This document shows, in pieces, positions 1,135 through 48,700 of a stretch of DNA of 64,000 nt. The stretch lies in contig NW_003314265.1 of assembly GCF_000143415.4 (NCBI RefSeq), forward strand, positions 2,242,785 through 2,306,784. The letters run 5' to 3'. Every line of letters starts with the position of its first letter. The stretch's first letter is position 1. Under the pieces are notes generated by a model. The model had not been told where the DNA came from. It saw only the letters and a program-made list of their open reading frames with translations, and searched no databases. Both the position numbers and the translations under genes were made by a program. Origin of the DNA: Selaginella moellendorffii. Lineage: Eukaryota; Plantae; Lycopodiophyta.

Positions 1135-4100
1135 ATGATCGCGGCCATGGCTGGCAACGCATTTGCGGCATCGTGCCCGTGCTCCACAGTTCACAGGCTC
1201 CGGATGTCGGAGTTTCGCAAGGATTACGATGCGCAGAGCTTCGCGATGCCGCCGGGGAGCGCCAGATCCAGGAAATCCTTCAGCGTCTCGGCCAAGAGCG
1301 AGAGAAGAGGAGCTGCTTCCACAGCGAAATCGGAGGGCAACAGGAGCTTCTCCAGGCGGTCTGTCATGGGGCTCGTCGCGTTGGTGTCGCCAGTGCTGCT
1401 TATCTCGGGAGGAGCAAAATCCGACGTTCCACACATAGAGGGTCAGTGCTTCTTTTTTCGATTTTCCTTGACTTTGTTTGCTTTGGGTTCCAGAATCCGA
1501 GAAACTGAGGCTCGACATGCTCCAATCCATCGAGAGGAGAATTGCCAGCAGGGCGGAGATATTGGCAAGCATTGAAACTCCTGCCAGTACCACTGCACCA
1601 TCTCTCAAGGAGGAAGCTATAGCTAGCGTTTCAAGTGAAGATTTATCAGTCGGCAAGGAAGTGGAGACCGTTACCCCTGCTCCATCTGTCAACGAGGAAG
1701 CTATAGCTAGCGTTTCGAGCTCTGCCCCTGAAGATTTATCAGTCGGCAAGGAAGTGGAGCGCGTCTCATCCGATATTGCAGCACTTCCGGAGTTGCAAGT
1801 TGCGGCCACTCCTCCGGTTTTATCTTCCTCGGATGAGAAAGTCGTAGAGGCAGTCACAGCTCTCGAAGAGGTAATCGAAGAACTTGCCGATGCTTGACTC
1901 ACTGTGTTTAAATTCCAGAAAAGCTCTCCGGAGAGTGGACCGCTAGGATTTTTAAATCTATTCGGTGTTGTCGGATCGGGAGTTCTTGGTGCGCTATATT
2001 GGTTGGAAGGTCAAGCTAAAAAAGCTACGAAGATGGCGTTAGCAGAGGTACATGCTATTTCTATTTGTGTCACTAGACATGGACACTCATCTGCCGTTGC
2101 GACCAGGCCAACTCGAAATTGGAAGAATCACAAGCTGCTATAATCGACATAAAGAGAAAACATCATACGGAGTTGGCTGATCAAAAGTCGGATCTTATGA
2201 ATAAGCTGACCGGATCAGAAGAAGAACGTGTAGAACTTTGCAACGAAATTACCATCCTCAAGTCGAATGCAAAGGAGATGCAGCTAAAGCTGGACAGCCA
2301 GAAAAACGTCAATCAGAACCTTGACAAGAAGGTGAAGGCCTACAGAGAAACAATCCAGGCCCTGGAGAGCAGTGTGCAAGCCGTCGAAGACAAGCTTGTG
2401 CAGGAAGAGCAGCGAAGGCAAGGTCTAGAGACCGAAGTCCGGAATGGAGGAGTTCAAATACGAGAGAGAGAAGAAAAGCTCGTTGGTCTAGAGGCAACCA
2501 TTAAGGAACAGGAAAACACCGAGCAAGAGCTACGGTCAGACATTTTCACTACGAGAACTGCGTTGGTCGACGCCGAGGACAGGATACAAAACCTCGTGAA
2601 AGAGTTGATCGTATCGCAGTCATGTCTGGAGGAGAGAGGGGACACTGTGCATGATTTGGAGGAACGTCTCGCGCAGGCAACAGCGAGAGCAGAGCAAGCG
2701 CAGCAAAGCTTGGCCAAAGCACAGGAGGAACTGACTGAGCTCCAAGCTGTGAGCAAGGAGCAGCTTCAAGTTGTAAATGCGGCACTAGCTTCCAAGGAAG
2801 GCGAAGTACAGGCAGCAAACTTGGAGCTGGATGCCGCTCGTGCCGAGGCTAAACAATCCGGCCTCGTCATAGAGAACTTCCAGCAGCAAGTGGAAGAACT
2901 GGAGCGAATTGTGGCACGGGAGCACGAGTCAGTGCAAAAGTTGACAGAAGATCTGAACTCCGCAGTCAATAGCCTTCGAGCGAAGACGAACGAGGCGTCG
3001 GCACTGGGCGCCGAGCTGACGTCCTACCAGAAGGAAATAGAGTCCCTGAGGAAGCAAAAGGAGGAGAGCAAGGCGATGACGGAGACAAAGCTGAAATCGC
3101 TGCGAGAGTCACTGCAAGCAGAGCAACTGGTGACGAGCCAGATGAAGCAGGAGCTGGACAACACGCGGACGAGCTTCCAGGCGTCGTCGATGGAGGTGAA
3201 GTCCCTGAGCGAGAAGCTGAAAGAAACGTTCCTGGTGAACAAGAAGGTGCAAGAGGAGCTGGAAGACGTCCGCCAGACGGCCGACGGCACCCTGGCTCTT
3301 CTAAACGACGAGAAGAAGAAGGTGGCACTGGCGGAGCAGCAGTACATGGAGACGCAAAAGGCTCTGGCCAGGGAGGAGCTACTCGTCCAGAGCTTGAGGT
3401 CCGAGTTCTCCAAGGCCATGGACGCCATGAACGACCTCCGCAAGCACCTCAACGCTCTGTCCAAGGACTTGCAAGACGCAAACGTCAAGGTGGCGTCGCT
3501 GGAGACGGAGAAGGCCATCCTCCAGGACGCACTCGCCAAGGAGACGAAGGTGGCCAGGAAGTTCAAGGACAAGGCGAGCTTCGCGGAGGGGGAGCTTACA
3601 AAGGTGGTGCGAGAGCGAGAAGGCTCGGTCTCCAAGGCTCGGAAGCTCGAGGACGAGCTCTCGGCGGCGGAGAGCGAGATGGGGAAGCTCAAGCAGCAGA
3701 TGGTCGTGATGGGGACCGTCATCGACTCGGCCGAGACGAGGATGGGAAGCATCCACCAGGTAAATGCCGAGGTAGCCTCTCTGGCTAGAAAGTTTGAGGG
3801 CGTCGTCTCATCTAATGTGGAACAAAAACAAACACTCAAGCGTCAGGTACTCAAGCCGCTCGTCCGTCGCTAACATAAGTTTTCTTCTCTCCTTCTCGAG
3901 AACCAGATGGATAAATTGAAGGAGCAGTCCAAGGCAGCGTCTGATATCACCAGAGAGCTCAAGAACATGAAGAGGCTGCTCAATCACTTCCAACAGGTAA
4001 GTGGTTCTAAGTTACTCTTCCAAGTTTGTTCTTGAGGTAAGTGGTTCTAAGTTTCTTAATGCTTTTCTTTGAGTTTTTCATTTTTGAGCTAATTGGTTCT

Positions 4101-4351
4101 AAGTTAGCTTCTTAGAGTTTTTTTTTTTTTTGGTTTTTCATACTTGAGCTAAGTGGTCTAAGTTACTCTTCCAAGTTTCTTCTTGAGCCCTTAGCGTTGT
4201 TTTTAATTCTCGAGAGTTTCACTAACAACCTTTGTTTCGATTTGTTCTTTCGCAGAATCTAAATGAAGCGGAGCTCGATCGAGTAGAAGCTGAGGCTGCG
4301 TTGCAAGCGGCCGTGCAGAGAAACATGGTGACAGTGTCGGAAGAAGCTTAA
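1135..4351 (+). CDS. MFP1: MAR-binding filament-like protein 1 (thylakoid-anchored coiled coil). Exons 1135-1441, 1494-1870, 1919-2047, 2107-3846, 3907-3996, 4256-4351
   Basis: Plastid transit peptide with SRR plus a hydrophobic stretch; TM segment FLNLFGVVGSGVLGALYWLE typical of MFP1; ~600 aa heptad coiled coil; junctions in frame. Confidence 0.8.
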
Positions 4352-4514
4352 AACAGGAAGATCTTCCAACGTGTATAGTAAAACTTGCTTACTTTATAGA
4401 ATATTCTGTTACAAGAATCTGCCGTCAGTGCAGGAATATACCGTTGTTTGAATGAGGGCAAAGACCAGTGAGTCATATTGTTTTTTCTTCTTGTGCGCTT
4501 GGCGGGCGAGAGCT

Positions 4515-5708
4515 ATGGAAATCCCCGAGAATCTCAAGGAGCGATTCACTGCGATGGGGAGCAAGCTCAAGATCGGCGGCGCCGAGGTCGGCCGCAAGGT
4601 CTCGGCGCAGATGACCGTGGTGGGAGGTAGGGTCAAGGAGCTGTTCCAGCCGCCATCGCCGAGCGAGCGGATGATCGAGGAGGCGACGGCCGCGAACCTG
4701 CGATCGCCGGACTGGGGGAGGTTCATGGAAATCTGCGACATGCTTGGCGATGGCCGGGTCTCCGGGCAGGACGTGGCGCGCGGGATCAAGAAGAGGATCG
4801 CGAACAAGAATGCGGGCGTTCAGCTGCTGGCGCTGGCGCTGCTGGAGGCGTGCGTCAAGAACCACGAGAAGATGTTCTCAGAGATTGCGTCGGAGAGGAT
4901 TCTGGACGACATGGTGAGGATGGCCGAGGATCCACAGGCGTGGCCGCGCTGCCGGGACAAGGCGCTGGCGATGATCGAGGCCTGGGGTGAGGCTACCGAG
5001 GAGCTTGGCTACTTGCCCGTCTACGAGGAGACTTACAAGGTAAGAGAAGGAAAGAGCTTTTATTTTCTAGAGCTCGGTTGCTTAGTTTTAACTTCTTTTC
5101 CAGAGCATGAGAGCACGGGGAGTGAGATTTCCTGGCCGCGACCCTTCGAGCTTGTCTCCCATCTTTACGCCCAAATCGTCACCTTCGGCTCCTTCTCTGC
5201 CGGATAGCGCGAGTGGTTTCTCCGGGGCTAGCGTGATCAACATGGGACGTCTTTCGGACAGTGCCACTTTGGACGTTGCCAAGAACAGCGTCGAAGTTCT
5301 CTCAAACGTACTAACATCCTCCAATCAGCACCAGGATGTTTCCAAAGTGAGTGTTTCCAAAGCCTTTTCGTTTGGTTTTTATATTATGCCTTCTCCTGGA
5401 TGTTCCAGGACGAGCTTACCATGTCTTTGGTCGAGCAATGCAAGCAAGCGCAGCGTAGAGTGCAGCAAGTAGCTCAAAGAGCTGGCGAGGGCGACCCCAT
5501 ACTCTTCCAGGCACTGGCCGTGAACGACGAGCTAGACCAGGTTCTTGAGAAGTTTAGCGAGTTCTGTGTCTCGTCCTCTTCGTCGCAGCAAAGCAAGCCA
5601 GCGGAACCGGCTCTCGTGACAGCCTTCGTCCAGGAAGATCAGAGCTATGACCCGCTATCAGATCTCGACGAAGAAGAGGAAGTGGCAAAGGCGCACCGAA
5701 AGGTGTGA
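4515..5708 (+). CDS. TOM1-like (TOL) VHS-GAT protein. Exons 4515-5039, 5104-5346, 5409-5708
   Basis: VHS domain (IEEATAANLRSPDWGRFMEICD...VQLLALALLEACVKN) and GAT domain (DELTMSLVEQCKQAQRRV...LFQALAVNDELDQVL). Confidence 0.9.
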
Positions 5709-5809
5709 TGAAAGATTATCATCGTGGTTTCATATTGCTCCCTCTTTTTGTAGGAACCGAACGATCATATATACAATCGCCGCTAAAGAGACTTCGCAGC
5801 CATTCTTTC

Positions 5810-7070
5810 TCACGGATTTTTGGGATGCTCTTCGCTGGTCTTGGCCTGCTCTGGATCGTTCTCCAGGGCTTCGTAGGTGTTAGCGGGATTCTCCTCGACC
5901 TTGTCAGCTTCGTAGTAGAGGAAGTAGTGCTGGAAGACGAAGAGAATGTCGAAGGCGATACTTTCCTACAGAGAACGCGAAAGATTAGAATCACAGTACC
6001 GAGAGCAAACATACCAGCGAGAGTCCCAGTTTGCCAACGTTCCCGGAGAAGTTCTCGGTGGAGTCTGCGATTGGAGAGCCAGATCTTTAAACGAGAACGA
6101 AAACTGGAAAGGCTTACGTTGGTCGATGGATTGCACGGCCATCTGGAGAATGTTGGCGATTCCACCCGACAAGTCCAGGAGAATGTTTCCTATGCTCCAG
6201 CCAACGGTGCTCTTCCTCCTGAAGTTCATCCAGGCCTGAGTTTTAATCGCATGAAAACGGTGTTGTTAACACTCTGTGTGATGTGATTTGCAGGGAAGTT
6301 TACCTGAGGGATGTACTTGATCGCTGTCATCACCAGTTGTATGATGCTGCGCAAGGATTTTTCATGCCAAGAATGTTCACAGAAAGAGAATTGGATCTTA
6401 CTTGAAAACTTGGACGAGCCACAGCCAGCGGCCGCTGGGAAATGCTACGATGAGACAGATCAATCCGGCTAGCCAAGCTCCCAGGGACACCAAAGCTCCG
6501 GCCTTGGACACCCTTTGTCCTCCTCTCTAAAGCGACACAAACGTAAGCTTGTCACCTTCTTCTTCTTTCTTACCTCATACAGGAAAACTTGCAGGATAGT
6601 GAATCCTGTGAGGAGCACGGCATGGATCGAGAAAGCAACGTCGTTTGGAGCAACTGGAATCATCTGGAAGGTGAAAAAACGGAAAAAACGATTCAGTGTT
6701 CTTCGTCTGTTGCTCAATTACGCACCTCATCAGCGCCATACTTGTCGTGGTACTGCCTTTGGACGACAGGGCTGAAGAAGACGGCGGCGTTGTAGATGAG
6801 ATACGAGGAATGCTTGGTGAAGTTGAGCAACAGGAAATCGAAGTTGAGCCCCACGACGCTGCAAGCAATCGAAAACTAGCTCGAGAAAAGGAAGCAAAAA
6901 ACGCAAAGGGGAGGGAGCGAGGAAGTATTCTTCCCGCGATCGAATGCGTACCTCTTTCGCCGGAAATTGAGCAGCACTTGCGGATAGAAGCTGATCGACC
7001 ACACCGTGAATGCAAACCATCCGAGAATTTGATAGATCACGGCCAAGGCGCTGGAATGCCAAGACGCCAT
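5810..7070 (-). CDS. Cystinosin homolog (PQ-loop vacuolar cystine/H+ transporter), copy 1, 8 exons
   Basis: [61 protein letters not shown] and [10 protein letters not shown] are cystinosin hallmarks. Confidence 0.92.
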
Positions 7071-7299
7071 TCTTTCTCCCTCGACAACCCCTAATCAACT
7101 TCACGAATCTTATGTACACCCCCGAGGTTCCTTGTACCTGGCCCAAAACCCAGGGGGACAATCCTAGCCGTTCGATAATCTGAAATGAATTGGCATTAAT
7201 TTGTTTGAAAATTTCACGACACATTTGAATGATGGCTGCTCGTACCAAGAGATCTAGCTACTTTGGGACTTTGTTTTAAAACTTTTCTCAGCTTATATC

Positions 7300-8590
7300 T
7301 ATCTATCTATATTTTGTTTTGGTAGTCTTGTGGTGCCCAACAACAAAGCATGAGACTATGCAAACAAATTTGCAAGTTTGTTGTATGTACCTTGGATCCT
7401 CTTGAAGTTCGTGTCTTCACGTCCATATGCTTAGAACCTAGCCAAAGCCTGTTTGATGCCACTGTAACTACTAGAGTGAGTAAACTCCATACCCTCAATT
7501 TGTGTGAAGCCTCTAGTGACCAGTCTCGCTTTGAAACGCACGACCTCACCACCTGGACCCAGCTTCATGCACAAGATCAGCTTCAAGGATACCACATGAT
7601 GTGGACGAAACCATGTCTGATTGTGGTGATTGTGATGAGCTTGATTAACAGCTGCCAGGCTACTGCCAGCTATTATGCTGCTTGAGGAGACGTCTTAGCT
7701 TCAAGGATTGTGGAAGGAAGCTGTTTCTTAGCAGCAGTAAACATGGCTTGACGAGGATTAAAACTCGTATCTGTGTCTTCTCAACAAGCTCTTGATAATA
7801 CTCTGTTCCCCTAGATATATATAAAACCAGGAACACCTAACACGCTCAGGAGCAGGAGGATCTAGTATCACTGGTGCACCACAGCTAGCTCGTTGTAAAT
7901 CACCATCCACTTTAGTTGGGAGAAGGGTTTAGGGGCACTCTGAGTGAAGAAGTTGTTGATTGTATGCTCTCCCCTGAAGAGTCAGTAGCTGAATACTCTA
8001 CCCTGAAGTTGAAGCACCACGAGAATTCTGCTGAAGAGACACCTGCCAAAACTAGAAACTCTTTGTCTTCATCCTTCCAAGGAGTCAGAGGCATAGATGC
8101 TGGAATGCCTGGAGGTTCTCTAGCTGGAGGTAACACAGCTTTGTCGTGAAGTTGAGAGTACATGTGATTCTCATGAAACACCACATGTATGCTAACCAGC
8201 TCAATCCAGCAATCCAAGTCCAGCAATTGATAAGTTTTATAAATGTCATCATAGCTGATGAAGACACTGGACTTCACATCCAATTTATGCCTCTCGTCTG
8301 GGATATGAGCAACAGCCAAATCTACGAAGTTATTTCCCCATGCCTGTTCAAGTACTATGGTTAACATCTTATTTAGGACATACACTTCTGTAACCACAGT
8401 ACAATCCCAAAAGCTTGGTAGGAGAGATGAGTCATAGCTGTCATAGCAGTTGAAGCCTTCAACCACCCCGTTCATCCAAGGAGTATATGGGACTGTGACT
8501 TATCTCTGGATTCCTACTTTCTCACATAACACTGCAAAAGCTCTAGAAGTGTATTCGCCACCCCATCATCAATAAAAACCTTTTCTTTTG
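7300..8590 (-). mobile_element. Degenerate Ty1/copia pol remnant (integrase then RT)
   Basis: Minus strand reads GEYTSRAF...VPYTPWMNGVVEGFN (integrase), HVVFHE, then VVRFKARLVTRGFTQIEG and HMDVKT (copia RT), with stops and frameshifts; INT-before-RT order is copia. Confidence 0.8.
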
Positions 8591-8649
8591 ACATGAAACA
8601 ATCTACAAACATCATTTAAGCCATCTGAATAAAAGGTGATTAATCTTGT

Positions 8650-10560
8650 GTCAAGCCAAATATCTATTGCTCCCCCTTGGTGTCTTAGCTCCAGCGATCC
8701 AGGCATAAAATCTTGGGGTCAAGATATTGGCTTCTAGTGGCTTAAACCAAAGGAAGACACCAGATACTTAGGGATTCAGGTTGGAACAAGATTCAGCACA
8801 ACACTTCAGGATGACACCCTGCTCCGGAAGATACAAACATCAATACAGAAATGGGCTTCTAAGATACTTGGTTTGCCAACGAGAGTGGCTGTGGCCAGGA
8901 GTGTCATCTTGCCCAATATTTGGTACCACCTCTTGATCTGGCCAGTTCTTGAACACACTCTTAAAAAGGTATGCACAATGGTACATAAATATGTGTTGCA
9001 GGGTGTGCCACAGGGCGAATCATGGCAAAGGTTGTGTGGCAGTCCATAGCACGCCCAAGAGTGTTAGGAGGACTTGGAATTATCAACCCGAGTGACATGG
9101 CAAAGGCATTACAATACAAGATTCTCTTACTGGGCCTCCAACCAGGTAACCAACCGTGGAGACTTATGTTCAAGCAGAGTTTGCTTGCAATCCAACCTAG
9201 GCATAACATTGTGAGATAGTGGGCAGAAGATCCACATTGGTTATTTGCTAAAGGGCCAAAGCAAGTAGTCAAAAGAGGCATATTGGTCCAAAGGATTCTC
9301 AGGCTGTGGTGTGAGTTTCTAGTTAGCTGAGAGCTACTAAAGGACTCTCAAGCAATTGATGGGAATGTTAGACAAGGATGTGAGGAAGACAATAAAGTGC
9401 ATATAAGTCTTCAATCTAGAGTAGTCGAGGAAAGTTCATCTAGACCTTTTTTGCATCATTAGCACAGTGAGTGAAGCAAAGAGGGGGCAGTTTTGGCCCA
9501 GCTAAGGCCTCAAACTTGGAGATTTTGTAGCATTGCAATGCAATGCTGAACTGGACGGGGAGTGAGTTAGATTAGGAGCCTGGATATGGGCATTCACAGC
9601 ACTTACACTAGCATAAGACAATGGAGATGTGGAGGTATGGTTTGTAGTATCTTCTGAACAGAATGTAGGTCATCCCTTTTGTGTTGTGAGAGGCAATATG
9701 CTGTTGCCAGACGGGGACAAATAGGCCATGTTAATGGTGATGGATGATAAAGGGTAGGATTTTAGTAGTACAATAGGCCCCAAAGCAATTGGTAGTGGTT
9801 CAGTCAAAGGCCATAGTCGAGGGGGATGACACCCTTAGTTGGTAGTGACAGCAGTTCATTGAGGATTTGAATTTGGATATTGTAGTATGGAAATGTGGCA
9901 TGAGGAGTTTCTTCTCATTTGAAGTCAAGGAAGTGCAAGATGGCCTCTTGACAAGTAGGGAGGAAGCTCGTGGGGAGATCCCCAATCTTTGGAGGAGGTG
10001 GATCGAGCAAGGAGTTAAGGCAAATTAAGTGGTGGGCAATACACCTGCTTTTTGGAAACTACTCGTACAACAGAAAGTCAAGGCCACCTCTTGGTTGGTA
10101 GCAAACAATGGGTTGCCAATGGGCCAACAATTCCAGGAGGAAGCATGCTAATGATACAAGGAGTGTGGCAAACTAGAGATGATACAACACATTTTGTGGG
10201 ACTACAATATGGCAAGAGAGGTATAACGTCAAATTCTCAAAGTGTCACAAGAATTAGGAGATGTTCTAGAGTTTCAAACTCGGAGTGGGGACGTTCTCCA
10301 TTGGTTTGAAGGAGCTTGAGGTCCGGCCACTAGTTCAGTGTGGAGACATATTCAACATTGAGGTCGACATGGATGGAGCATGCAAGTTTGGTGGGACATG
10401 ATAGGGGTTGAAGTTGGTATATCCGTATGGGAGGCAATGGGCCACAAGTGTTAGTTTATTTGGAGAGCCACAAGGGTGCAAGCACTTTGGGAGGGAGGCA
10501 CAGAACCATTATCACTTCGATAGACAATTGTCGCAAATATGACTTTAGGTATTGAAAGTT
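8650..10560 (+). mobile_element. Degenerate non-LTR (L1-like LINE) ORF2 3' remnant
   Basis: RYLGIQVG, KIQTSIQKWASKIL...VAVARSVILPNIWY and AKVVWQSIARPRVLGGLGI are typical post-RT L1 motifs; many stops; boundaries approximate. Confidence 0.7.
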
Positions 10561-11272
10561 ACTTGTCGGCTAGTCCTTACGGACACTCTTTTCTTACTGC
10601 CACGATGGCAAAAAGTCGGTATTGCTAGTTCCCTTTATCAACCCCTCTTGTTCAAGTGTTAGTAAACAAGGTTTAGCATCTGTACTTAGCCAAATGGACA
10701 TAAGGTAGGAACTCCTATATATTTCTAGCTTAGCATACTTGGCCTGGCTCTTAGTTCTCTTTTGCTTTGTTTTGCACTGGCTTAACAAGAACCCTCGCGT
10801 ATTGAGATTAGTCCCTCAATATCGTTGGATGATAGCTTACTGTGTCTGCTAAACACCCTCGCTATCATGCCCTTTGTGTTAGTCTTATTTCGGTCCCAAA
10901 TGCTATTTATAGAAAGTGTCTAGATTTGCTCATTGGGTATATCTATGGAATGTAGAGATTGTCTTGAACACAATAGTGTTCGTCCCATGTCCAAATTCAC
11001 AATCTAGTGCTATTCCATATTTAGTAAGTTTCGAGCTTGTCTTAGAAACTAACTCCTGATACTAAGAGAGGCTTGGGGTGAAAGCCCAAAGCGTGTGTTC
11101 CTCAAAAGCGAGGGGGGGGTAATGGCAGTTCCAAATGTATAGTAGGGATAGTGGGTAGGTTAGACATGGCCGACCAACCTAAGGCATAGTCTAGCTCCCA
11201 CTTGCGTGTTTGTCTGTAAGCTCCTGAATTTGAACTTCCCGGTAAGTCAGTAATATTCAAACCCAAGGACAC

Positions 11273-12969
11273 TGTAGGCGACTAAATTTTCCATTCTACT
11301 TTAGTCACTTAACCACACCTCCAATCACTTGGAGGAGTCTCACTCACAACCTCCATAAGTCCTATTTCAGACTTGGGCTTGCTAGCCCCGAGAATGGCAT
11401 CCCCACCACTCAACCTTTGCACTTGATCCAAGTGCTCCACGTGTCTGATCCCATGACCGACACCCCAAAGTACCACTGACATATCAGCCCGTTACGCTAA
11501 GGCCATGCCCCTTTACCTTGGTCACACCAGCGGTCTAACACCACCTACATCACAGTCCCATTTCTCAAGGACTGAGCCATCCGTCCATGAATGTTCATTC
11601 CAGATCCACTCCTTAGCATCCTTAAGATGCTCATAGACATGGGGAATAGCCTTCCCCAATACCCCTTTTCCGGTCTTCACCAAGTCCCGTTCTGCCCATA
11701 GCCGTGTTCACCAACACTGCCATTGGATCGAGGCCCACAGGCCTGACCACTAAGTCCCACAGTCCTCTGGGACTTCCTCACCACTCGACTATATCCTTGG
11801 TCACTACACCGGAGGACTACTCCTCTTCCTTTCCACAATCTAGGCCTTTGGGACAACATTTCGGAACACCATGGCCCTACGCGGGCCTCATGGGTACTCT
11901 CCCCGCTTTCCGCCTTTGGGTGCTCTAGCCATGGGCTTAGAGCGAGGTTCCGTTGAGCCACACCTGGTATCCAAGTAGGTAGTGTCACCCACACTTGGAC
12001 TAGGAGCATCGGCCAGTCGATCTCCCGGGGGAACTAGAGCCGGCTCTTGAACACTTCACCAAGCTACCCCGCTTGTCGGTCCGTATTCACTCTAGTCTTG
12101 GACTTCCCAGTGGTCAGTTCATCACCCAACACTGGGTATGGCCTTCCCGAGCCAAACTAGCCTTTCCTGGCCCAAACTGGCCTTTCCTGGCCAAATTGGC
12201 TCCACTGGGCTCCAACCCCCACCCTCTCCCTACTATACTTTTGGAACCCCCCGCAGCCCCCCCCCGGGGGACGATCGCTTTGGGCTTTCACCCAACTGCC
12301 TGTATTAGTATTCGGACTCGGACTCGGGCTCGAACTCGGACTCGGTCTCGGTCCCGATTTCGGACTCGGACTCAGTCTCGGTCTCGGTCCCGATTTCGGA
12401 CTCGGACTCAGTCTCGGTCTCGGTCTTGGCCTCAGTCTCGGTCTCAGTCTCGGTCTCGGTCTCGGTTCCACCTCGGACTCCATCTCGGACTCCATCTCGG
12501 GTCCATCTCAGACTCCATCTCGGACTCCATCTCGGGTCCATCTCGGACTCCATCTCAGATCCATCTCGGACTCCATCTCGGACTCCATCTCAGACTCCAT
12601 CTCGGACTCCATCTCAGACTCCATCTCGGACTCCATCTCGGGTCCATCTTGGACTCCATCTCGGGTCCATCTCAGACTCCATCTCGGACTCCATATTGGA
12701 CTCCAACTCGGGTCCGCCTCAGACTCCATCTCGGACACTTCCACGTGTCATGTGTTGGTCCTTTTTGGGTCCCTTTTTGGAGCCTTGCTTATTGCTCGCT
12801 TCGTGCTCGCTCCTTGAGCTCTTTGTTGGGAGTTCCACTCCCACTCTCGACCTTCCAAGTCAGAGCTTTTAGTCCAAACGTGTTACACTCGTTTGACTTT
12901 CACTTCGGCCACTACCACGTGGCACCCTTTCGGGCTCCACTTTGGGGCCTAGGGATTTTGTGTTTCACA
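11273..12969 (-). repeat. 3' LTR
   Basis: Begins TGTAGGCGACTAAA and ends GTGTTTCACA; aligns with 16583-18320. Confidence 0.9.
12311..12738. repeat. 6/12-bp tandem array (TCGGAC/TCGGTC, then CTCGGACTCCAT) inside the 3' LTR
   Basis: Directly visible; it generates the MESEMESE and SISD pseudo-ORFs. Confidence 0.95.
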
Positions 12970-43716: not shown

Positions 43717-44155
43717 TGCAATTCTCGTCGATAGCTTTAGCTTGGCTCTTTCTCTTTTGTCTGGGGCTATTCACTCGCTAGTGAATGCTGGATTGCAGGT
43801 GCCATTAGCGATGCGTATATCCATCATCCATATCCACGGGAGATTTTCGTTCGGCCGGTATGTCTCTCTCAACATTTTTTTTTTTTTGCTGTTTTTCGGC
43901 CTCTTTTTTATTTTTGGAGTACGATGATGTGTTGCCTGTTGCTATGGTTGTGACACGTGGGTCAGTGTTTGCTCGACAGACGCGATCGTGCCAGCTGGAA
44001 GCGTGTCCAGTGCCATCGTCTGCCGCGTGTTAGCCGCCGTGTCGCCTTTTATATAACTCGTGGGAAGCACAGGCAAGTGTTGTGCTGTTCTTGTTTCCTA
44101 GCTCATCTCTATCTTTCGCAGCTCTGATTCTGAGTGGGAGTCGCAGGCGATCGAA

Positions 44156-44417
44156 ATGGCTGGCGCCACTTTCATTGATGTTTTGCTGGCCATCATCCTC
44201 CCTCCGCTGGGGGTTTTCCTAAGATTCGGCTGCGCGGTGAGTTGTTGCTCTTTCTCTTGCTCTTCCGCAGTCGTTTCCGCTTGAATGCGTTCCAAAGCTG
44301 GAGCTAATTCGGTGGTTTGTGGTTTTCTCTCAGGTTGAGTTCTGGATATGTCTGCTGCTCACAATTCTCGGCTACATCCCGGGGATCATCTACGCAATCT
44401 ACGTGCTGGTTGGATAA
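44156..44417 (+). CDS. RCI2: RCI2/PMP3/LTI6 small hydrophobic stress protein (54 aa). Exons 44156-44236, 44334-44417
   Basis: MAGATFIDVLLAIILPPLGVFLRFGCA|VEFWICLLLTILGYIPGIIYAIYVLVG*. Confidence 0.95.
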
Positions 44418-44661
44418 GTGACTTCGGTGTGGTGCTCCCTCGTCGCTGTAGATACTTAGCCTGGATTGGAAGCGAACGAAACGGAAAAAATAGGGGGGAG
44501 AAAAAAAAAATTTGGAAGGTAGCTTCGCCTAATAAGCACTTGTTAAATTGGATGCTACCATAATGGTGGAATTTTTTCTCGCGTAGAGTAAAAAATGTTG
44601 TTGTGATTTTACTTGAGGAATCTATCCATTTGGTACACCTGCGTTTTCAACCAGCCAGCCC

Positions 44662-44671
44662 GCCACGTGGC
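44662..44671. promoter_or_regulatory. Perfect palindromic G-box/ABRE upstream of the second RCI2 gene
   Basis: GCCACGTGGC ~180 bp before the ATG; GACACGTGG also lies ~200 bp before the first RCI2. Confidence 0.5.
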
Positions 44672-44850
44672 ATTGCTAGCTAGCTGTTTTTAGTGTGTGT
44701 GTTTGCATTGTGGAGCTTAGGGTTTCTATCTGGGCGAGGCGATCTCGGCGCTACAAGAGGTACATTCTAATTGTGAGCTCGGCGATCGATTTGGATCGTT
44801 CTCGTTGTGTAGCAGAAGAGATTTCTCGAGGCGGCGGCGGCGGCGGCGGC

Positions 44851-45482
44851 ATGGACGATAGCACCACGGCGACATGCCTGGAAATCCTCCTGGCGATTCT
44901 TCTCCCGCCAGTGGGGGTTTTCTTCAAGTATGGATGTGAGGTAGGCTCGCCAAAAACTTTCCCACTCTTTTCTGAGCCCTTTTTTCTTTCTGCGTTTGCT
45001 TTTCTCTGTAGCCACTTAGAGGAAAGTAAAGTAGATTAGAGGGACGTGCTCTACTTTGTTGACTCTCATCGTCATGATCCCGCCTCACTTTTTCTTCCCG
45101 TTTCCGACCAGGTCGAGTTTTGGATCTGCCTGCTCTTCACGGTTCTCGGTTACTTGCCGGGGATCGCCTTCGCAGTCTATGTCATACTTTGCAGGCGTCG
45201 TAGCTTCGGGCGTGAGCCTCTCGTCCGCTGAGAGTCACTCCACTCTTTTTCTTCCACCGCCACTCTTGTTTCAAGAGCTGTGAAATAAACGCTGTAGACT
45301 TTTAGATTGTTTTCGTTTCTGGCCTGATGTTGATGGTGGTTTTGTTTCTTCTGTTTGTTTCGTCTCTGGCCCGCCTGGATTCTCTTCCGTGGCAGATCGA
45401 GTTTTGGATCTGCCTGCTGCTCACGGTCTTCGGCTACATCCCTGGGATCATCTACGCCGTCTATGTCATTGTGGGGCGCTAG
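44851..45482 (+). CDS. RCI2: Second RCI2/PMP3 gene: exon 1 44851-44940 joined to either terminal exon A (45112-45231) or terminal exon B (45396-45482)
   Basis: MDDSTTATCLEILLAILLPPVGVFFKYGCE followed by VEFWICLLFTVLGYLPGIAFAVYVILCRRRSFGREPLVR* or IEFWICLLLTVFGYIPGIIYAVYVIVGR*; both have phase-0 CAG acceptors. Confidence 0.9.
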
Positions 45483-45793
45483 ACGTCTATAAAGCCTTCC
45501 AAGTAAAAGAAAGCGCTGTGGCCGTGCTTGGTTTGTGTGATTCAATTCTTTGATCAGAGGACGCTGCAACATCATCGTTATGTACTAGTCTCTCTCGAGT
45601 TCCTGCTAAACAAACAGTGCCTAACGTACGTCCGTAGCTATCTTCTAGTTCCAAGTCTATGAAGTTTCTATAAGCTTACTTCTCGCAATAGTTTTGTTGC
45701 CATCTCCGAGTAAATAAACACAGTCGTGCTCATACTTTCCTGGCGAATAACACCATTGATATTATACTATTCATTTGCTTACCTACTCGTAAC

Positions 45794-48700
45794 TTATGGT
45801 CGCGCGGCCTCTTGCTCGGCTTCCTGAGAATGAGAGAAGATGACTTAGAACCTTTGCATTCGTACCAAATCGCTTCTTACTTCTTCGTCGTCTTCATCCA
45901 CTTTGTTTGTCTTCCAGCAGAGTAGACTGGCACCTTGCTTTTGCCGAGCACTTGGTTTCCTGGAAGGACAAGAAAAACTAACTGTTAACACTGAGTAGTA
46001 GCAAAAGATAATCACTACTTAACTGGTTCTTGGACTCGACGTGCTGCCCCGCTTCCGAGCAAAGATCCGTGCTAAAGTTTCGCACCGTCTTGAGCTTGAA
46101 CCGTCTGCCTTGAATCTGGAGCATTTGTCTGCCTTGTTGACGCAGTCCCCAACCTTTGGTGCCATCGTTCTCCGAGTGGTTCTCGGAGCTGCCAGACTTT
46201 CTGTGCGAAAAGTCTTCAAAGTCCCACGAGCCTTTCGGGAACTCGTCGCCCTCGCGCTTGACGTTCCCGATGAAGACGGGAAATGACCGAGAGTTGAGAT
46301 ACTCGGCTTGCGGTACGGATGACTTTGCAGGCGAGGCCGGAACTTTAAACTCCGCCGAAACGGGCAAGAGTTTCTGCTCGTGGCTTTTGGACTTGGTATC
46401 TTCGTCTCCAGAGAGGTGGAGGCGAATCTCTACCGGAAAGCCGAGAACTAGTTGAAACGCGTGAGAGATGCTGGTTTTTGACCTCTCGGCGCTTGTTCTG
46501 TGGTCAGCCTGTAGAAATTCCAAATGTGCTACTGCACGACCTGAGTAAACCATTTGTGAAGAGGAGAAAGCATTTCAACAGTCATTTACCTCCTTCAATT
46601 GATATTGACGACAGTCTACTGTGGTTCCAAAGAAGCTGCTTGAGAATGCTAGACTGGCTGACTTCCAGAACCCGTATCCAAGTGTCCAGTAGCTTTTGCT
46701 GACGCTCGAGCGCAACCCTGTCACCTGTGCATGGAAGAACACGTAGGAAACAAAGAAATTCTACCACTCAAAGTTCCAACCTTCTCCAAGTGCCGATGGT
46801 TGTTGTGCTGTGGTGTCCTGACCATTTAAGTTGTTCTCAGCGTCAATCTGAAGGGAATTCAGGTGTCCAGAGAGAACAGCTTGGTGCTTTAAGTTGTTCT
46901 CTGCGTCAATCTGAAGGGAATTCAGGTGTCCAGAGAGAACAGCTTGGTGCTTTAAGTTGTTCTCTGCGTCAATCTGAAGGGAATTCAGGTGTCCAGAGAG
47001 AACAGCTTGGTGCTGATGTTCTACGTCATCCCAGGACTCTTTTGTTAGCGGAGGTTCCCACTCTATTGTCTCCTTCTCGCTCGTGTCATTAGCTGCTAAT
47101 ATGCTGGGTGTATTGCTTGTTCTACCAGAGGACCCAGGAAATCCAGAGTGAGGATCAGGAGCAAACTGTAGTAAAGCGGCCGTCAGCCATGTTGTCTGAT
47201 CTTGAGAAGATCGTATTTGCTTCTCAGATTCCGACAGCGTTTTGAGAGCATGTCGCAGCTTCTCCAGCTGATCTTTAGACACTGACGACATAAAGTTCAA
47301 ATTTGTTTAGAAACTCTTTGAAAAAACTCAAGATAATACTCACATGCGTGCTTATGAAAAAATCCCTTGTCGCTTGCTGGCATGTATCCACCTGCTAGGA
47401 TGTCCGTTATCAGGGTGGCGATCTGGGACATGAGAGCTAGTGGCTCAACACCTGCGTCCATGAACTCTCTAATGCACTTGACAGTGTTCAGTGTGTCCCC
47501 AGTGAGAGCCATGTCCAGCAAATCCGCCAGCTTTGCATTGGACACCAGCCCAACCTGAAAAAAAATTCGTACAATGTTAGTCATGATCTAGAAAAAAATC
47601 TCTAAGAATAAACTAGAAACCACAGCACACTAACCCCTGAAACGTACAAGCTCTTGCACCACTTCTAGAGTGATCTTCTGTCCCACGAGACTAAGTTGAT
47701 CCAGTGTTGTTTCAGCATCCCTGAGCGAACCACCAGACCTTGCCGCGATGAGGTCGAGCGCATCTTTCTCCACCTCCAAGTTTTCCTTTGCAGCGAGAGC
47801 CTGCAACCTGCTCACCACGTCCGAGTCCTTGATCTTGGGAAAATGGAACTTTTGACACCTTGTTGACGCCGGATGTGGCAACTGCTCGGTGTCAGTCGTG
47901 GTGAGAATGAAAACCGCGTGCTCTGGGGGTTCTTCGAGGCATTTCAGAAACACGTTCCACCCCTCTGCTGTGAGTGTGTGGCACTCGTCAATGATGAAAA
48001 CTTTGTAACGACCTGATGACGGCCCAACCACAGCGTCCATTAGCAGCTTCTTCATTAGACTTGTTGAGTCGTGACTTGCAACGTCCACTTCTTTCACGTC
48101 TCCGCTTTTCCCCAGGCAGAGAAGCAAGCACTCTCTGCAGACTCCACAGGGCCGAGTATCTTCCACAGAGACGCAGTTCAATGCCGCCGCCAAGATTTTA
48201 GCAGCCGAAGTCTTTCCAGTTCCACGAGGCCCATGGAACAAATATACCGGTGCTATCCTCCCCCTGGTCACGGCATTGCCAAGAGCTTGCACCAACATGT
48301 TCTGTCCAACTATATCCCTGAAGGTCTTGGGACGGTACTTCTGGCTCAAGCTCCTGTGCCTTTTCCCATTCGAGAGCCTGTCCAAATCCTTCTCCAAACT
48401 ACCAGCTAAAAGTGACAGGTTCGAGATAGCAGCAGCACTGTCTGTGTTTGCAGAAACAGGTATGCTCCCAGGAGCCGGGATCATCTCTTGACCCGTGATC
48501 TTCCTCCTTGGAATGTCCGGATAGCAGGAGAGACTTTTCCCAGCTACTTCGAGGAGGTTCTTTCCTTTGTGCCTTGGCCAGTAAGACCATGGGAGGCCGC
48601 ACCCGTGACTGCTTTCAGTCCCGTCGTAAGCATCGGCTTCATGGCCCTTTCGTGGCAGGAACTTCTTGTATGGATGGGAACCCATAGAAAAGCCAAAGTT

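What the first reader, a model, noticed from the sequence alone, without database searches (positions are those of the whole stretch)
44851..45482. One RCI2/PMP3 first exon, two duplicated terminal exons: a possible splice/polyA switch between tailed and tail-less isoforms
Seen: a single exon 1 (TM1, donor GAG|GTAGG at 44940) is followed by two complete, intact, diverged copies of exon 2 (TM2). Each has a pyrimidine tract and a phase-0 CAG acceptor. No second exon 1 lies in the 164 nt between them, but an AATAAA (45284-45289) follows exon A. Exon A adds a basic tail (CRRRSFGREPLVR); exon B ends like the minimal form (VGR*). Known: plant RCI2 proteins come in tail-less and C-terminally tailed classes, normally encoded by separate genes. 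Inference: here both classes come from one gene by alternative last-exon use. Both proteins are invisible as wholes in an ORF track.
Basis: partly seen in the sequence, partly recalled or inferred. Interest (0 to 1): 0.78.

Follow-up and report, generated by a model that had tools for sequence, protein, structure and literature searches.

The report
One RCI2 gene, two last exons
A small stress-membrane-protein gene (RCI2/PMP3) of the spikemoss Selaginella moellendorffii has one first exon and two diverged copies of its last exon, and public RNA data show both copies spliced to that first exon, so one gene makes mRNAs for a tail-less and a basic-tailed form, only the first of which is annotated.

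Summary
The window is Selaginella moellendorffii scaffold GL377569.1. It holds a tandem pair of PMP3/RCI2 genes.

The second gene has:
- one exon 1 (44851-44940);
- exon 2A (45112-45231), which ends in a 13-residue basic tail;
- exon 2B (45396-45482), which is tail-less.

Every piece matches Pfam Pmp3 above its cut-off. There is no other exon 1 anywhere in the 64 kb.

Spliced contigs from two independent studies carry both joints, 44940>45112 and 44940>45396. Both are GT..AG and phase 0. The public model (SELMODRAFT_136629, 58 aa) uses exon 2B only, and the tailed 69-aa form was not found in a 5.8-billion-protein collection.

Exon 2A evolves faster than 2B (8 replacement against 2 silent changes). 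Even so, all six replacements stay hydrophobic (P about 0.006 under neutral simulation), and it carries no haplotype variant.

Not shown:
- use of the proximal AATAAA (one A-spliced contig runs on into exon 2B);
- any regulation of the choice;
- the protein itself;
- conservation in other species;
- homology of the tail to seed-plant tails.

Verdict: a real variant architecture of a known family, built on a known mechanism (alternative last exons from exon duplication). The same scan noted the same architecture on another piece of this genome (s1-355717).

The parts
44156..44420 (+). Upstream tandem paralogue (RCI2 gene 1): exon 1 44156-44236, intron 44237-44333, exon 2 44334-44420. Tail-less, 54 aa.
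   Evidence: Pfam Pmp3 matches both halves. The spliced joint appears in runs X4 and X6. It is a called gene in L001.
44851..44940 (+). Gene 2 exon 1 coding part (30 codons, TM1). The donor GAG|GTAGGC follows at 44940/44941.
   Evidence: It is the left side of both joints.
44941..45111 (+). Intron removed in the A form (171 nt). It is also the first part of the 455-nt intron of the B form.
   Evidence: Joint 44940>45112, GT..AG, in X4 and X6.
45112..45231 (+). Exon 2A: TM2 plus a 13-residue basic tail (CRRRSFGREPLVR) and the stop codon. It is the proximal alternative last coding exon.
   Evidence: Pfam 33.6 bits. Joined to exon 1 in X4 (contig of 342 nt) and X6 (229 nt). No haplotype variant lies in it. 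All replacements are hydrophobic.
45232..45395 (+). Spacer of 164 nt. It is the 3' UTR of the A form and the last part of the B-form intron. It holds AATAAA at 45284-45289.
   Evidence: The X6 A-contig ends at 45310, while the X4 A-contig continues to 45423. Six haplotype variants fall here.
45396..45482 (+). Exon 2B: TM2 ending VIVGR plus the stop codon. It is the distal alternative last coding exon and the one used by the public model SELMODRAFT_136629.
   Evidence: Pfam 41.0 bits. Joint 44940>45396 in X4 and X6, plus the X4 loose end ATCGAGTT behind 44940. P0001.
45483..45740 (+). 3' UTR of the B form (and of the read-through A form), with a distal AATAAA at 45713-45718. Its end is not mapped. 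It overlaps the 3' end of a convergent minus-strand gene.
   Evidence: Contigs 45411-45817 (X4) and 45394-45822 (X6). Hexamer scan.

Best explanation
What is shown. This is a single RCI2/PMP3 gene of Selaginella moellendorffii whose second (last) coding exon exists in two diverged tandem copies. Both copies are spliced, one or the other, to the same exon 1 in vivo.

The two products follow from the sequence. Use of the proximal acceptor (45112) gives an mRNA for a 69-aa protein with its own version of TM2 and a 13-residue polybasic tail. Skipping that acceptor and using the distal one (45396) gives the annotated 58-aa tail-less protein.

Inferred mechanism. The choice is a competition between two good phase-0 CAG acceptors in one transcription unit. 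Cleavage at the proximal AATAAA probably reinforces it, because cleavage there would remove exon 2B and fix the A outcome. A-spliced RNAs that read through would carry exon 2B as a roughly 500-nt 3' UTR.

Inferred function. The A protein is a working two-helix proteolipid whose juxtamembrane Cys-Arg-Arg-Arg-Ser tail changes trafficking or lipid and partner contacts. This rests on analogy with tail-type RCI2 and yeast SNA2, where tails alter localisation and abolish pmp3 complementation.
For: - Anatomy and family.
- Only one exon 1 serves two exon 2 copies.
- Both joints are present with GT..AG ends in two runs from two studies. The junction contigs carry 201-314 nt of unique exon 2A sequence or 429 nt of exon 2B plus UTR.
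- The longest exact run shared by 2A and 2B is 22 nt, below Logan's assembly word (k=31 as I recall, not stated in any tool output). If so, the joints are not graph cross-overs.
- Independent unspliced contigs of 1.09 and 1.26 kb span both exons, so the tandem arrangement is not an assembly artefact.
- In X4 the first intron part (45015-45095) has no contig while 45232-45395 is covered. The read-on past 45310 therefore belongs to A-spliced RNA, not to unspliced precursor.
- Exon 2A stays open. Its six replacements are all hydrophobic, which happened in 0.6% of 100,000 neutral simulations.
- Pairwise dN/dS of 2A against 2B is 0.34 at dS 0.5.
- Haplotype variants number 0 in exon 1, 0 in exon 2A and 2 (both synonymous) in exon 2B, against about 24 in about 950 nt of non-coding sequence.
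- On tail effects in relatives, the review PMC7835403 reports that tails block yeast pmp3 complementation and steer SNA2 localisation.
Against: - On the exon 2A branch, replacement changes outnumber silent ones 8 to 2. The other two branches together give 5 to 11 (Fisher P 0.04). That is what relaxed constraint would also give.
- Exon 2A scores lower against Pfam than 2B.
- There is no protein evidence.
- Contigs give no reliable ratios, strands or 3' ends.
- Only two of the four runs laid show spliced forms of this gene.
- Read-through A transcripts with a long 3' UTR could be decay targets.
- No relative with both exons could be examined. A Diphasiastrum homologue has a plain two-exon gene.
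- The 69-aa form is in no public annotation searched.
Confidence: 0.72

Rival explanations
1. Exon 2A is a decaying duplicate that still has a good acceptor. Its use is splicing noise or an unproductive side product, and the only functional product is the annotated tail-less protein.
For: There is an excess of replacement over silent changes on the 2A branch (8:2). Its Pfam score is lower. The form is not annotated and was not found in the word-index search; the 1.84-billion-representative search showed no 2A-like tailed relative, though that library would likely hide one. A-spliced RNA reading on into exon 2B would have a long 3' UTR.
Against: Junction contigs for A and B have depths of the same order in two studies. 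The frame is open over 39 codons. All six replacements are hydrophobic (P about 0.006). There is no variant in 120 nt, where the neighbouring spacer has 6 in 164 nt. An AATAAA sits 53 nt after the stop, and a contig ends 21 nt after it.
Confidence: 0.2
2. Both isoforms are real, but the mechanism is pure alternative 3' splice-site choice. The proximal AATAAA is not used, and all transcripts end at the distal site.
For: The X4 contig joins exon 1 to 45110-45423 without a break, while the upstream intron part has no contig.
Against: In X6 the A-junction contig stops at 45310 and nothing covers 45311-45393. That is the expected distance from AATAAA 45284-45289. Contig ends are weak evidence either way.
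Confidence: 0.3
3. There are two separate genes (exon 2B having its own undetected first exon), or the arrangement is an assembly or contig artefact.
For: None found.
Against: The direct joint 44940>45396 appears in two runs. No exon-1-like sequence lies in 44941-45395. Independent contigs span the whole locus. The window is identical to the public scaffold. The 2A/2B shared run of 22 nt is too short to create false joints, assuming an assembly word of about 31 nt, which is my recollection for Logan.
Confidence: 0.02

Closest known systems
Plant RCI2/PMP3/LTI6/Esi3 proteolipids (Pfam PF01679), tail-less and tail-type classes
   Same: Both share two transmembrane helices, about 54-75 aa, and a two-exon gene with the intron between TM1 and TM2. 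The family has forms with and without a hydrophilic C-terminal extension. The annotated product (P0001) is 67-82% identical to land-plant members.
   Different: In the literature read here, the two classes are products of separate genes, and all family members have two exons and one intron (PMC7835403, PMC6288971). Here one exon 1 serves both. The tail is basic (five Arg, one Glu) and lacks the Tyr-x-x-hydrophobic end of seed-plant tails.
KRAS4A/KRAS4B: alternative last coding exons that arose by exon duplication or capture and differ in the C-terminal membrane-targeting part
   Same: Two homologous terminal coding exons sit in tandem, and one or the other is joined to the same upstream exon. 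The products differ in a short C-terminal basic or Cys-containing membrane-proximal segment (PMC9882654).
   Different: The protein family and kingdom are unrelated. Here the alternative exon also replaces a whole transmembrane helix. Conservation and regulation are unknown. Part of the A RNA keeps exon 2B as untranslated sequence.
Ceratopteris richardii tail-type RCI2 KP509_37G019700 (P0123)
   Same: It is the best single-copy match to exon 2A among 1.84 billion representatives (45.9 bits). It shares GYLPG, the ...YVILC end of TM2, and scattered tail residues (C, R, F, P, R).
   Different: Its tail is longer and not basic. Exon 2B matches the same protein almost as well in the core (18/26 against 20/27 identities), so no specific kinship of 2A with tail-type genes is shown.

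Membership tests
PMP3/RCI2 (Pfam PF01679) | Match to the family profile above the curated cut-off, covering both helices | tested here: met
   Exon 1 scores 33.1 bits (profile 2-22), exon 2A 33.6 bits and exon 2B 41.0 bits (profile 25-49), against a cut-off of 22.9.
PMP3/RCI2 (Pfam PF01679) | Two-exon gene with a phase-0 intron between TM1 and TM2 | tested here: met
   Joints 44940>45112 and 44940>45396. The same structure is reported for all Triticeae members (PMC6288971) and was seen in the upstream paralogue and in Diphasiastrum.
Tail-type RCI2 (group II) | Hydrophilic C-terminal extension beyond TM2 | tested here: met
   Exon 2A encodes 13 residues after ...YVIL, six of them charged. Tail-less members end 2-6 residues after the same point.
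Tail-type RCI2 (group II) | Tail homologous to those of seed-plant tail-type members (acidic or mixed, ending Tyr-x-x-hydrophobic) | tested here: inconclusive
   Eighteen long-tailed hits were listed. Most true tail-type ones among them end like YEPLA, YQPVYA or YHPIYN. The tail here has EPLV but no Tyr and is net +4. The weak alignment to a fern tail gives 5 identities in 13. The segment is too short for statistics.
Tail-type RCI2 (group II) | Tail prevents complementation of yeast pmp3 salt sensitivity or changes localisation | not testable with these tools
   This is known for Arabidopsis and Camelina tails and for yeast SNA2 (PMC7835403). It needs an experiment.
Alternative last exons from tandem exon duplication | Two homologous adjacent exons, each with its own acceptor and stop codon | tested here: met
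   79.5% DNA identity over 78 nt and 71% protein identity. A shared CCCGCCT lies 25-31 nt upstream of both acceptors.
Alternative last exons from tandem exon duplication | Each exon joined to the same upstream exon in RNA, with no joint between the two | tested here: met
   Both joints appear in X4 and X6, and no 2A>2B joint appears in any of the four runs.
Alternative last exons from tandem exon duplication | Proximal exon uses its own poly(A) site | tested here: inconclusive
   AATAAA lies at 45284-45289, and the X6 contig ends at 45310. However, the X4 contig reads on to 45423. Contigs cannot show RNA ends.
Alternative last exons from tandem exon duplication | Both exons conserved in related species | not tested
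   No other Selaginella genome or transcriptome was reachable. The only lycophyte locus fetched (Diphasiastrum, L002) has a single exon 2. Another piece of the same genome is noted to have the same architecture (s1-355717, unchecked).

The most novel reading that the evidence does not exclude
Exon 2A is not a young copy but the lycophyte counterpart of the tail-type exon of ferns and seed plants. It shares the GYLPG...YVILC end and has a faint tail resemblance to a Ceratopteris tail-type gene. On this reading, an early vascular-plant RCI2 gene made the tailed and tail-less classes from one promoter by alternative last exons. Other lineages later resolved the two into separate genes, and in Selaginella the choice is still a stress-regulated switch.
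Probability: 0.08. Interest if true: 0.8.

Novelty: new variant of a known kind. Interest (0 to 1): 0.5.

Why it matters
RCI2/PMP3 proteins are among the most studied small stress-induced membrane proteins of plants. What the C-terminal tail does is an open question, and the review read here says the function of tail-type members is not well established.

A natural gene that puts a tailed and a tail-less form under one promoter, with the same TM1, is a ready-made isogenic pair. The two forms can be compared for localisation, yeast pmp3 complementation and partner binding, and the splice choice can be followed under cold, salt, ABA or drying.

It is also a clear plant case of new protein isoforms arising by duplication of a terminal exon. 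It corrects the public gene model, which hides a whole coding exon inside an 'intron'.

The limits are plain. Only one species was examined, there is no protein evidence, and there is no evidence of regulation.

Tried and rejected
1. The idea that the tail was recruited from the former 3' UTR, by homology between the exon 2A tail and the 3' flank of gene 1. It looked plausible in the MAFFT alignment, but local alignments are at chance level: 32 of 500 and 686 of 2000 shuffles reach the score. Dropped.

2. Which two of the three exon 2 copies are sisters. Three sequences give only a star tree. The first 23 nt of 2A and 2B are nearly identical while the rest differs by 27%. That could be partial gene conversion or uneven constraint. 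Unresolved.

3. An RNA stem that loops out exon 2A (45060-45071 with 45226-45237, 11 of 12 paired). By my own estimate about 1.5 such pairs are expected by chance in this region. Not claimed.

4. Word-index search with exon 2A: no candidate. Search with exon 1: only the annotated B form.

5. Full HMMER search with exon 2A. The two top hits contain two exon-2-like stretches, but neither is a parallel case.
   - The Tetracentron protein is a fused model of two complete tandem genes.
   - The Salix dunnii one comes from a 99-100% identical roughly 3-kb repeat, which may be a very recent duplication or an assembly repeat.

6. The Diphasiastrum homologue locus has no second exon 2 within 4 kb.

7. 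Ceratopteris locus DNA could not be fetched.

8. Literature: no paper found describes a tail/tail-less splice switch in RCI2/PMP3, and no paper found links Selaginella to the family. A poplar study only lists LTI6A among genes with alternative 3' splice-site and exon-skipping events.

Full report
**1. What is in the sequence**

- An ATG at 44851 opens a 30-codon exon that ends GAG at 44940, followed by GTAGGC.
- At 45112, behind a tract that is 75% pyrimidine over 40 nt and a CAG, a 39-codon exon begins. It ends with TGA at 45229-45231.
- After 164 nt there is a second CAG, and a 28-codon exon runs from 45396 to the TAG at 45480-45482.
- AATAAA lies at 45284-45289, 53 nt after the first stop. 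A second AATAAA lies at 45713-45718.

Translated piece by piece, each exon alone passes the Pfam Pmp3 cut-off. Exon 1 matches the first helix of the profile, and each exon 2 copy matches the second helix.

tblastn of all exon peptides against the 64 kb finds two exon-1 copies and three exon-2 copies and nothing else. No exon 1 is hidden between 44941 and 45395.

**2. Where it comes from and what is annotated**

A word-index search with exon 1 returns one protein, SELMODRAFT_136629 of Selaginella moellendorffii (P0001, 58 aa). Its sequence is exon 1 plus exon 2B.

The locus fetched for it (GL377569.1) is identical to the window over 1101 aligned bases. The public model therefore treats 44941-45395, including the whole of exon 2A, as intron.

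A search with exon 2A found no candidate at all. An identical annotated 69-aa protein would have shared many words, so the tailed form is not in that collection.

**3. Is exon 2A used?**

Contigs of four public runs were laid on 43800-46200. Two runs from two different studies (X4, X6) hold spliced RNA of this gene, and both hold both joints.
- Joint 44940>45112 appears in contigs of 342 and 229 nt, with 28 nt of exon 1 followed by 314 or 201 nt starting at exon 2A.
- Joint 44940>45396 appears in a contig running through exon 2B and its UTR in X6. In X4 it appears in a junction contig plus an exon 1 contig whose overhang reads ATCGAGTT, which is the start of exon 2B.
- Both skipped segments have GT..AG ends.
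- No joint links 2A to 2B, and no joint links gene 1 to gene 2.

The longest exact run shared by the two exon copies is 22 nt. That is shorter than the assembly word (k=31 is my recollection for Logan; the tool output does not state it), so the joints should not be graph artefacts.

Two other runs (X1, X2) hold unspliced contigs of 1.09 and 1.26 kb that span exon 1, 2A and 2B. This independently confirms the genomic arrangement. The tool warns that contig depths cannot rank isoforms. All that can be said is that A and B junction contigs are of the same order in both runs, with hints that B is the more abundant.

**4. Splice choice or poly(A) choice?**

In X6 the A contig stops at 45310, 21 nt past the AATAAA, and nothing covers 45311-45393. 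That is what use of the proximal site would give.

In X4 the A contig continues unbroken to 45423, into exon 2B, while the first intron part (45015-45095) has no contig. This read-on therefore belongs to RNA already spliced at acceptor A, not to precursor.

So at least part of the A class is an alternative 3' splice-site product that carries exon 2B as untranslated sequence. Use of the proximal poly(A) site is plausible but unproven.

From general knowledge of plant nonsense-mediated decay, the read-through A form, with a 3' UTR of roughly 500 nt, could be less stable than a short A form. This is inference.

**5. Is exon 2A under selection?**

Exons 2A and 2B are 79.5% identical over 78 nt, with dN 0.17, dS 0.50 and a ratio of 0.34. 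With the gene 1 exon as a third sequence, changes can be assigned to three branches.

| Branch | Silent | Replacement |
|---|---|---|
| 2A | 2 | 8 |
| 2B | 4 | 2 |
| gene 1 | 7 | 3 |

The 2A branch is enriched in replacements (Fisher P 0.04 against the other two). It therefore evolves under relaxed or changed constraint.

Against simple decay:
- The six replaced residues (L>F, I>L, I>A, Y>F, V>L, G>C) all stay hydrophobic. Only 0.6% of 100,000 neutral simulations with the same number of changes gave no stop and only hydrophobic replacements.
- The variant haplotypes seen in the runs carry about 24 differences in about 950 nt of non-coding sequence, six of them in the 164-nt spacer. They carry none in exon 1, none in exon 2A, and two, both synonymous, in exon 2B (codon reading).

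I read this as a diverging but maintained exon. The samples are small and the tests are rough.

**6. The tail**

After ...YVIL, exon 2A encodes CRRRSFGREPLVR, with five Arg and one Glu.

Among 120 relatives, the long-tailed members are mostly acidic or mixed and end in Tyr-x-x-hydrophobic motifs such as YEPLA. The Selaginella tail has EPLV but no Tyr.

The full HMMER search with exon 2A gives a Ceratopteris tail-type protein as the best single-copy hit. It shares GYLPG...YVILC and five of thirteen tail positions. However, exon 2B matches the same protein almost as well in the core. Homology of the tail to the tail-type class is therefore open.

From general knowledge, a juxtamembrane Cys, an Arg-Arg-Arg run and an Arg-Arg-x-Ser site suggest S-acylation, binding of anionic lipids or an Arg-based retention signal, and phosphorylation. 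None of this is tested.

The review read here reports that tails of plant RCI2 prevent complementation of yeast pmp3, that truncation restores it, and that the SNA2 tail directs localisation (PMC7835403). That is the basis for expecting different behaviour of the two products.

**7. Comparison with what is known**

Family papers describe two exons and one intron for all members, and separate genes for the tailed and tail-less classes. Searches for a splice-based switch in this family, or for Selaginella RCI2, found nothing. A poplar study only lists an LTI6A gene among genes with alternative splicing events.

The mechanism itself, tandem exon duplication giving alternative homologous exons, is well known. 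The closest analogue is KRAS 4A/4B, where two homologous last coding exons give different C-terminal membrane-targeting segments (PMC9882654).

This finding is therefore a new variant of a known kind, not a new kind.

**8. Limits**

- Reads tools were capped at one call, so runs labelled as other organisms could not be examined.
- No other Selaginella sequence was reachable.
- The earlier scan note s1-355717 reports the same architecture, with the same 632-letter span, on another piece of this genome. That piece is probably the second haplotype. I could not read it, so it is not counted as evidence.

Noticed in passing
window 44334: In runs X4 and X6 the spliced gene 1 contig has A instead of G at the first base of exon 2. 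This changes Val to Ile, the residue that exon 2B has at the same place.
   Followed up: no
window 43954-43960 and 44663-44670: Both RCI2 genes have a G-box/ABRE-like CACGTGG about 190-200 nt upstream of their ATG. The motif occurs 20 times in the window against 4.8 expected, and no shuffle reached 20. This fits ABA or stress control but was not tested.
   Followed up: partly
window 44760-44812: There is a possible 53-nt intron in the 5' UTR of gene 2 (GT at 44760, AG at 44811-44812). X4 contigs break at 44759 with a loose end that partly fits 44813 onward, and no X4 contig covers 44772-44852. However, the GGC repeat at 44830-44850 was masked by the tool.
   Followed up: no
window 45394-46200: A convergent minus-strand gene (DNA polymerase III gamma/tau-like, 1113 aa in L001) has introns 45823-45879 and 45959-46022. 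One X6 contig runs from exon 1/exon 2B through the 3' UTR into these spliced minus-strand exons, so the 3' ends of the two genes overlap or abut.
   Followed up: no
window 44569-45880: Runs X1 and X2 hold this gene only as unspliced contigs that differ from the window by 1.1-1.3%, including a 10-nt insertion after 44737. X2 nevertheless shows spliced joints for the neighbouring gene. These contigs could be DNA carry-over, precursor, or antisense read-through from the convergent gene. Unexplained.
   Followed up: no
L003 (Salix dunnii CM027671.1) 2546-5750: One exon 1 is followed by two 100% identical exon 2 copies 2884 nt apart, inside a 99-100% identical roughly 3-kb repeat. The second copy lacks a detectable exon 1. 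The public model (P0122, 83 aa) strings both exon 2 copies together. This may be a recent duplication or an assembly repeat. A poplar gene with a similar chromosome-13 number is listed with alternative 3' splice-site and exon-skipping events in PMC8529222, but orthology was not checked.
   Followed up: partly
L004 (Tetracentron sinense CM026565.1) 2552-12960: The 119-aa protein P0121 is a fused gene model of two complete tandem tail-type RCI2 genes about 10 kb apart, not an exon duplication.
   Followed up: yes
P0129 (ENA metagenome protein, 65 aa): An unnamed Pmp3-like protein of unknown source ends ...GYLPGMAFAFYFLLSRRRS..., strikingly like exon 2A (GYLPGIAFAVYVILCRRRS). This is probably convergence on a basic juxtamembrane end.
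   Followed up: no
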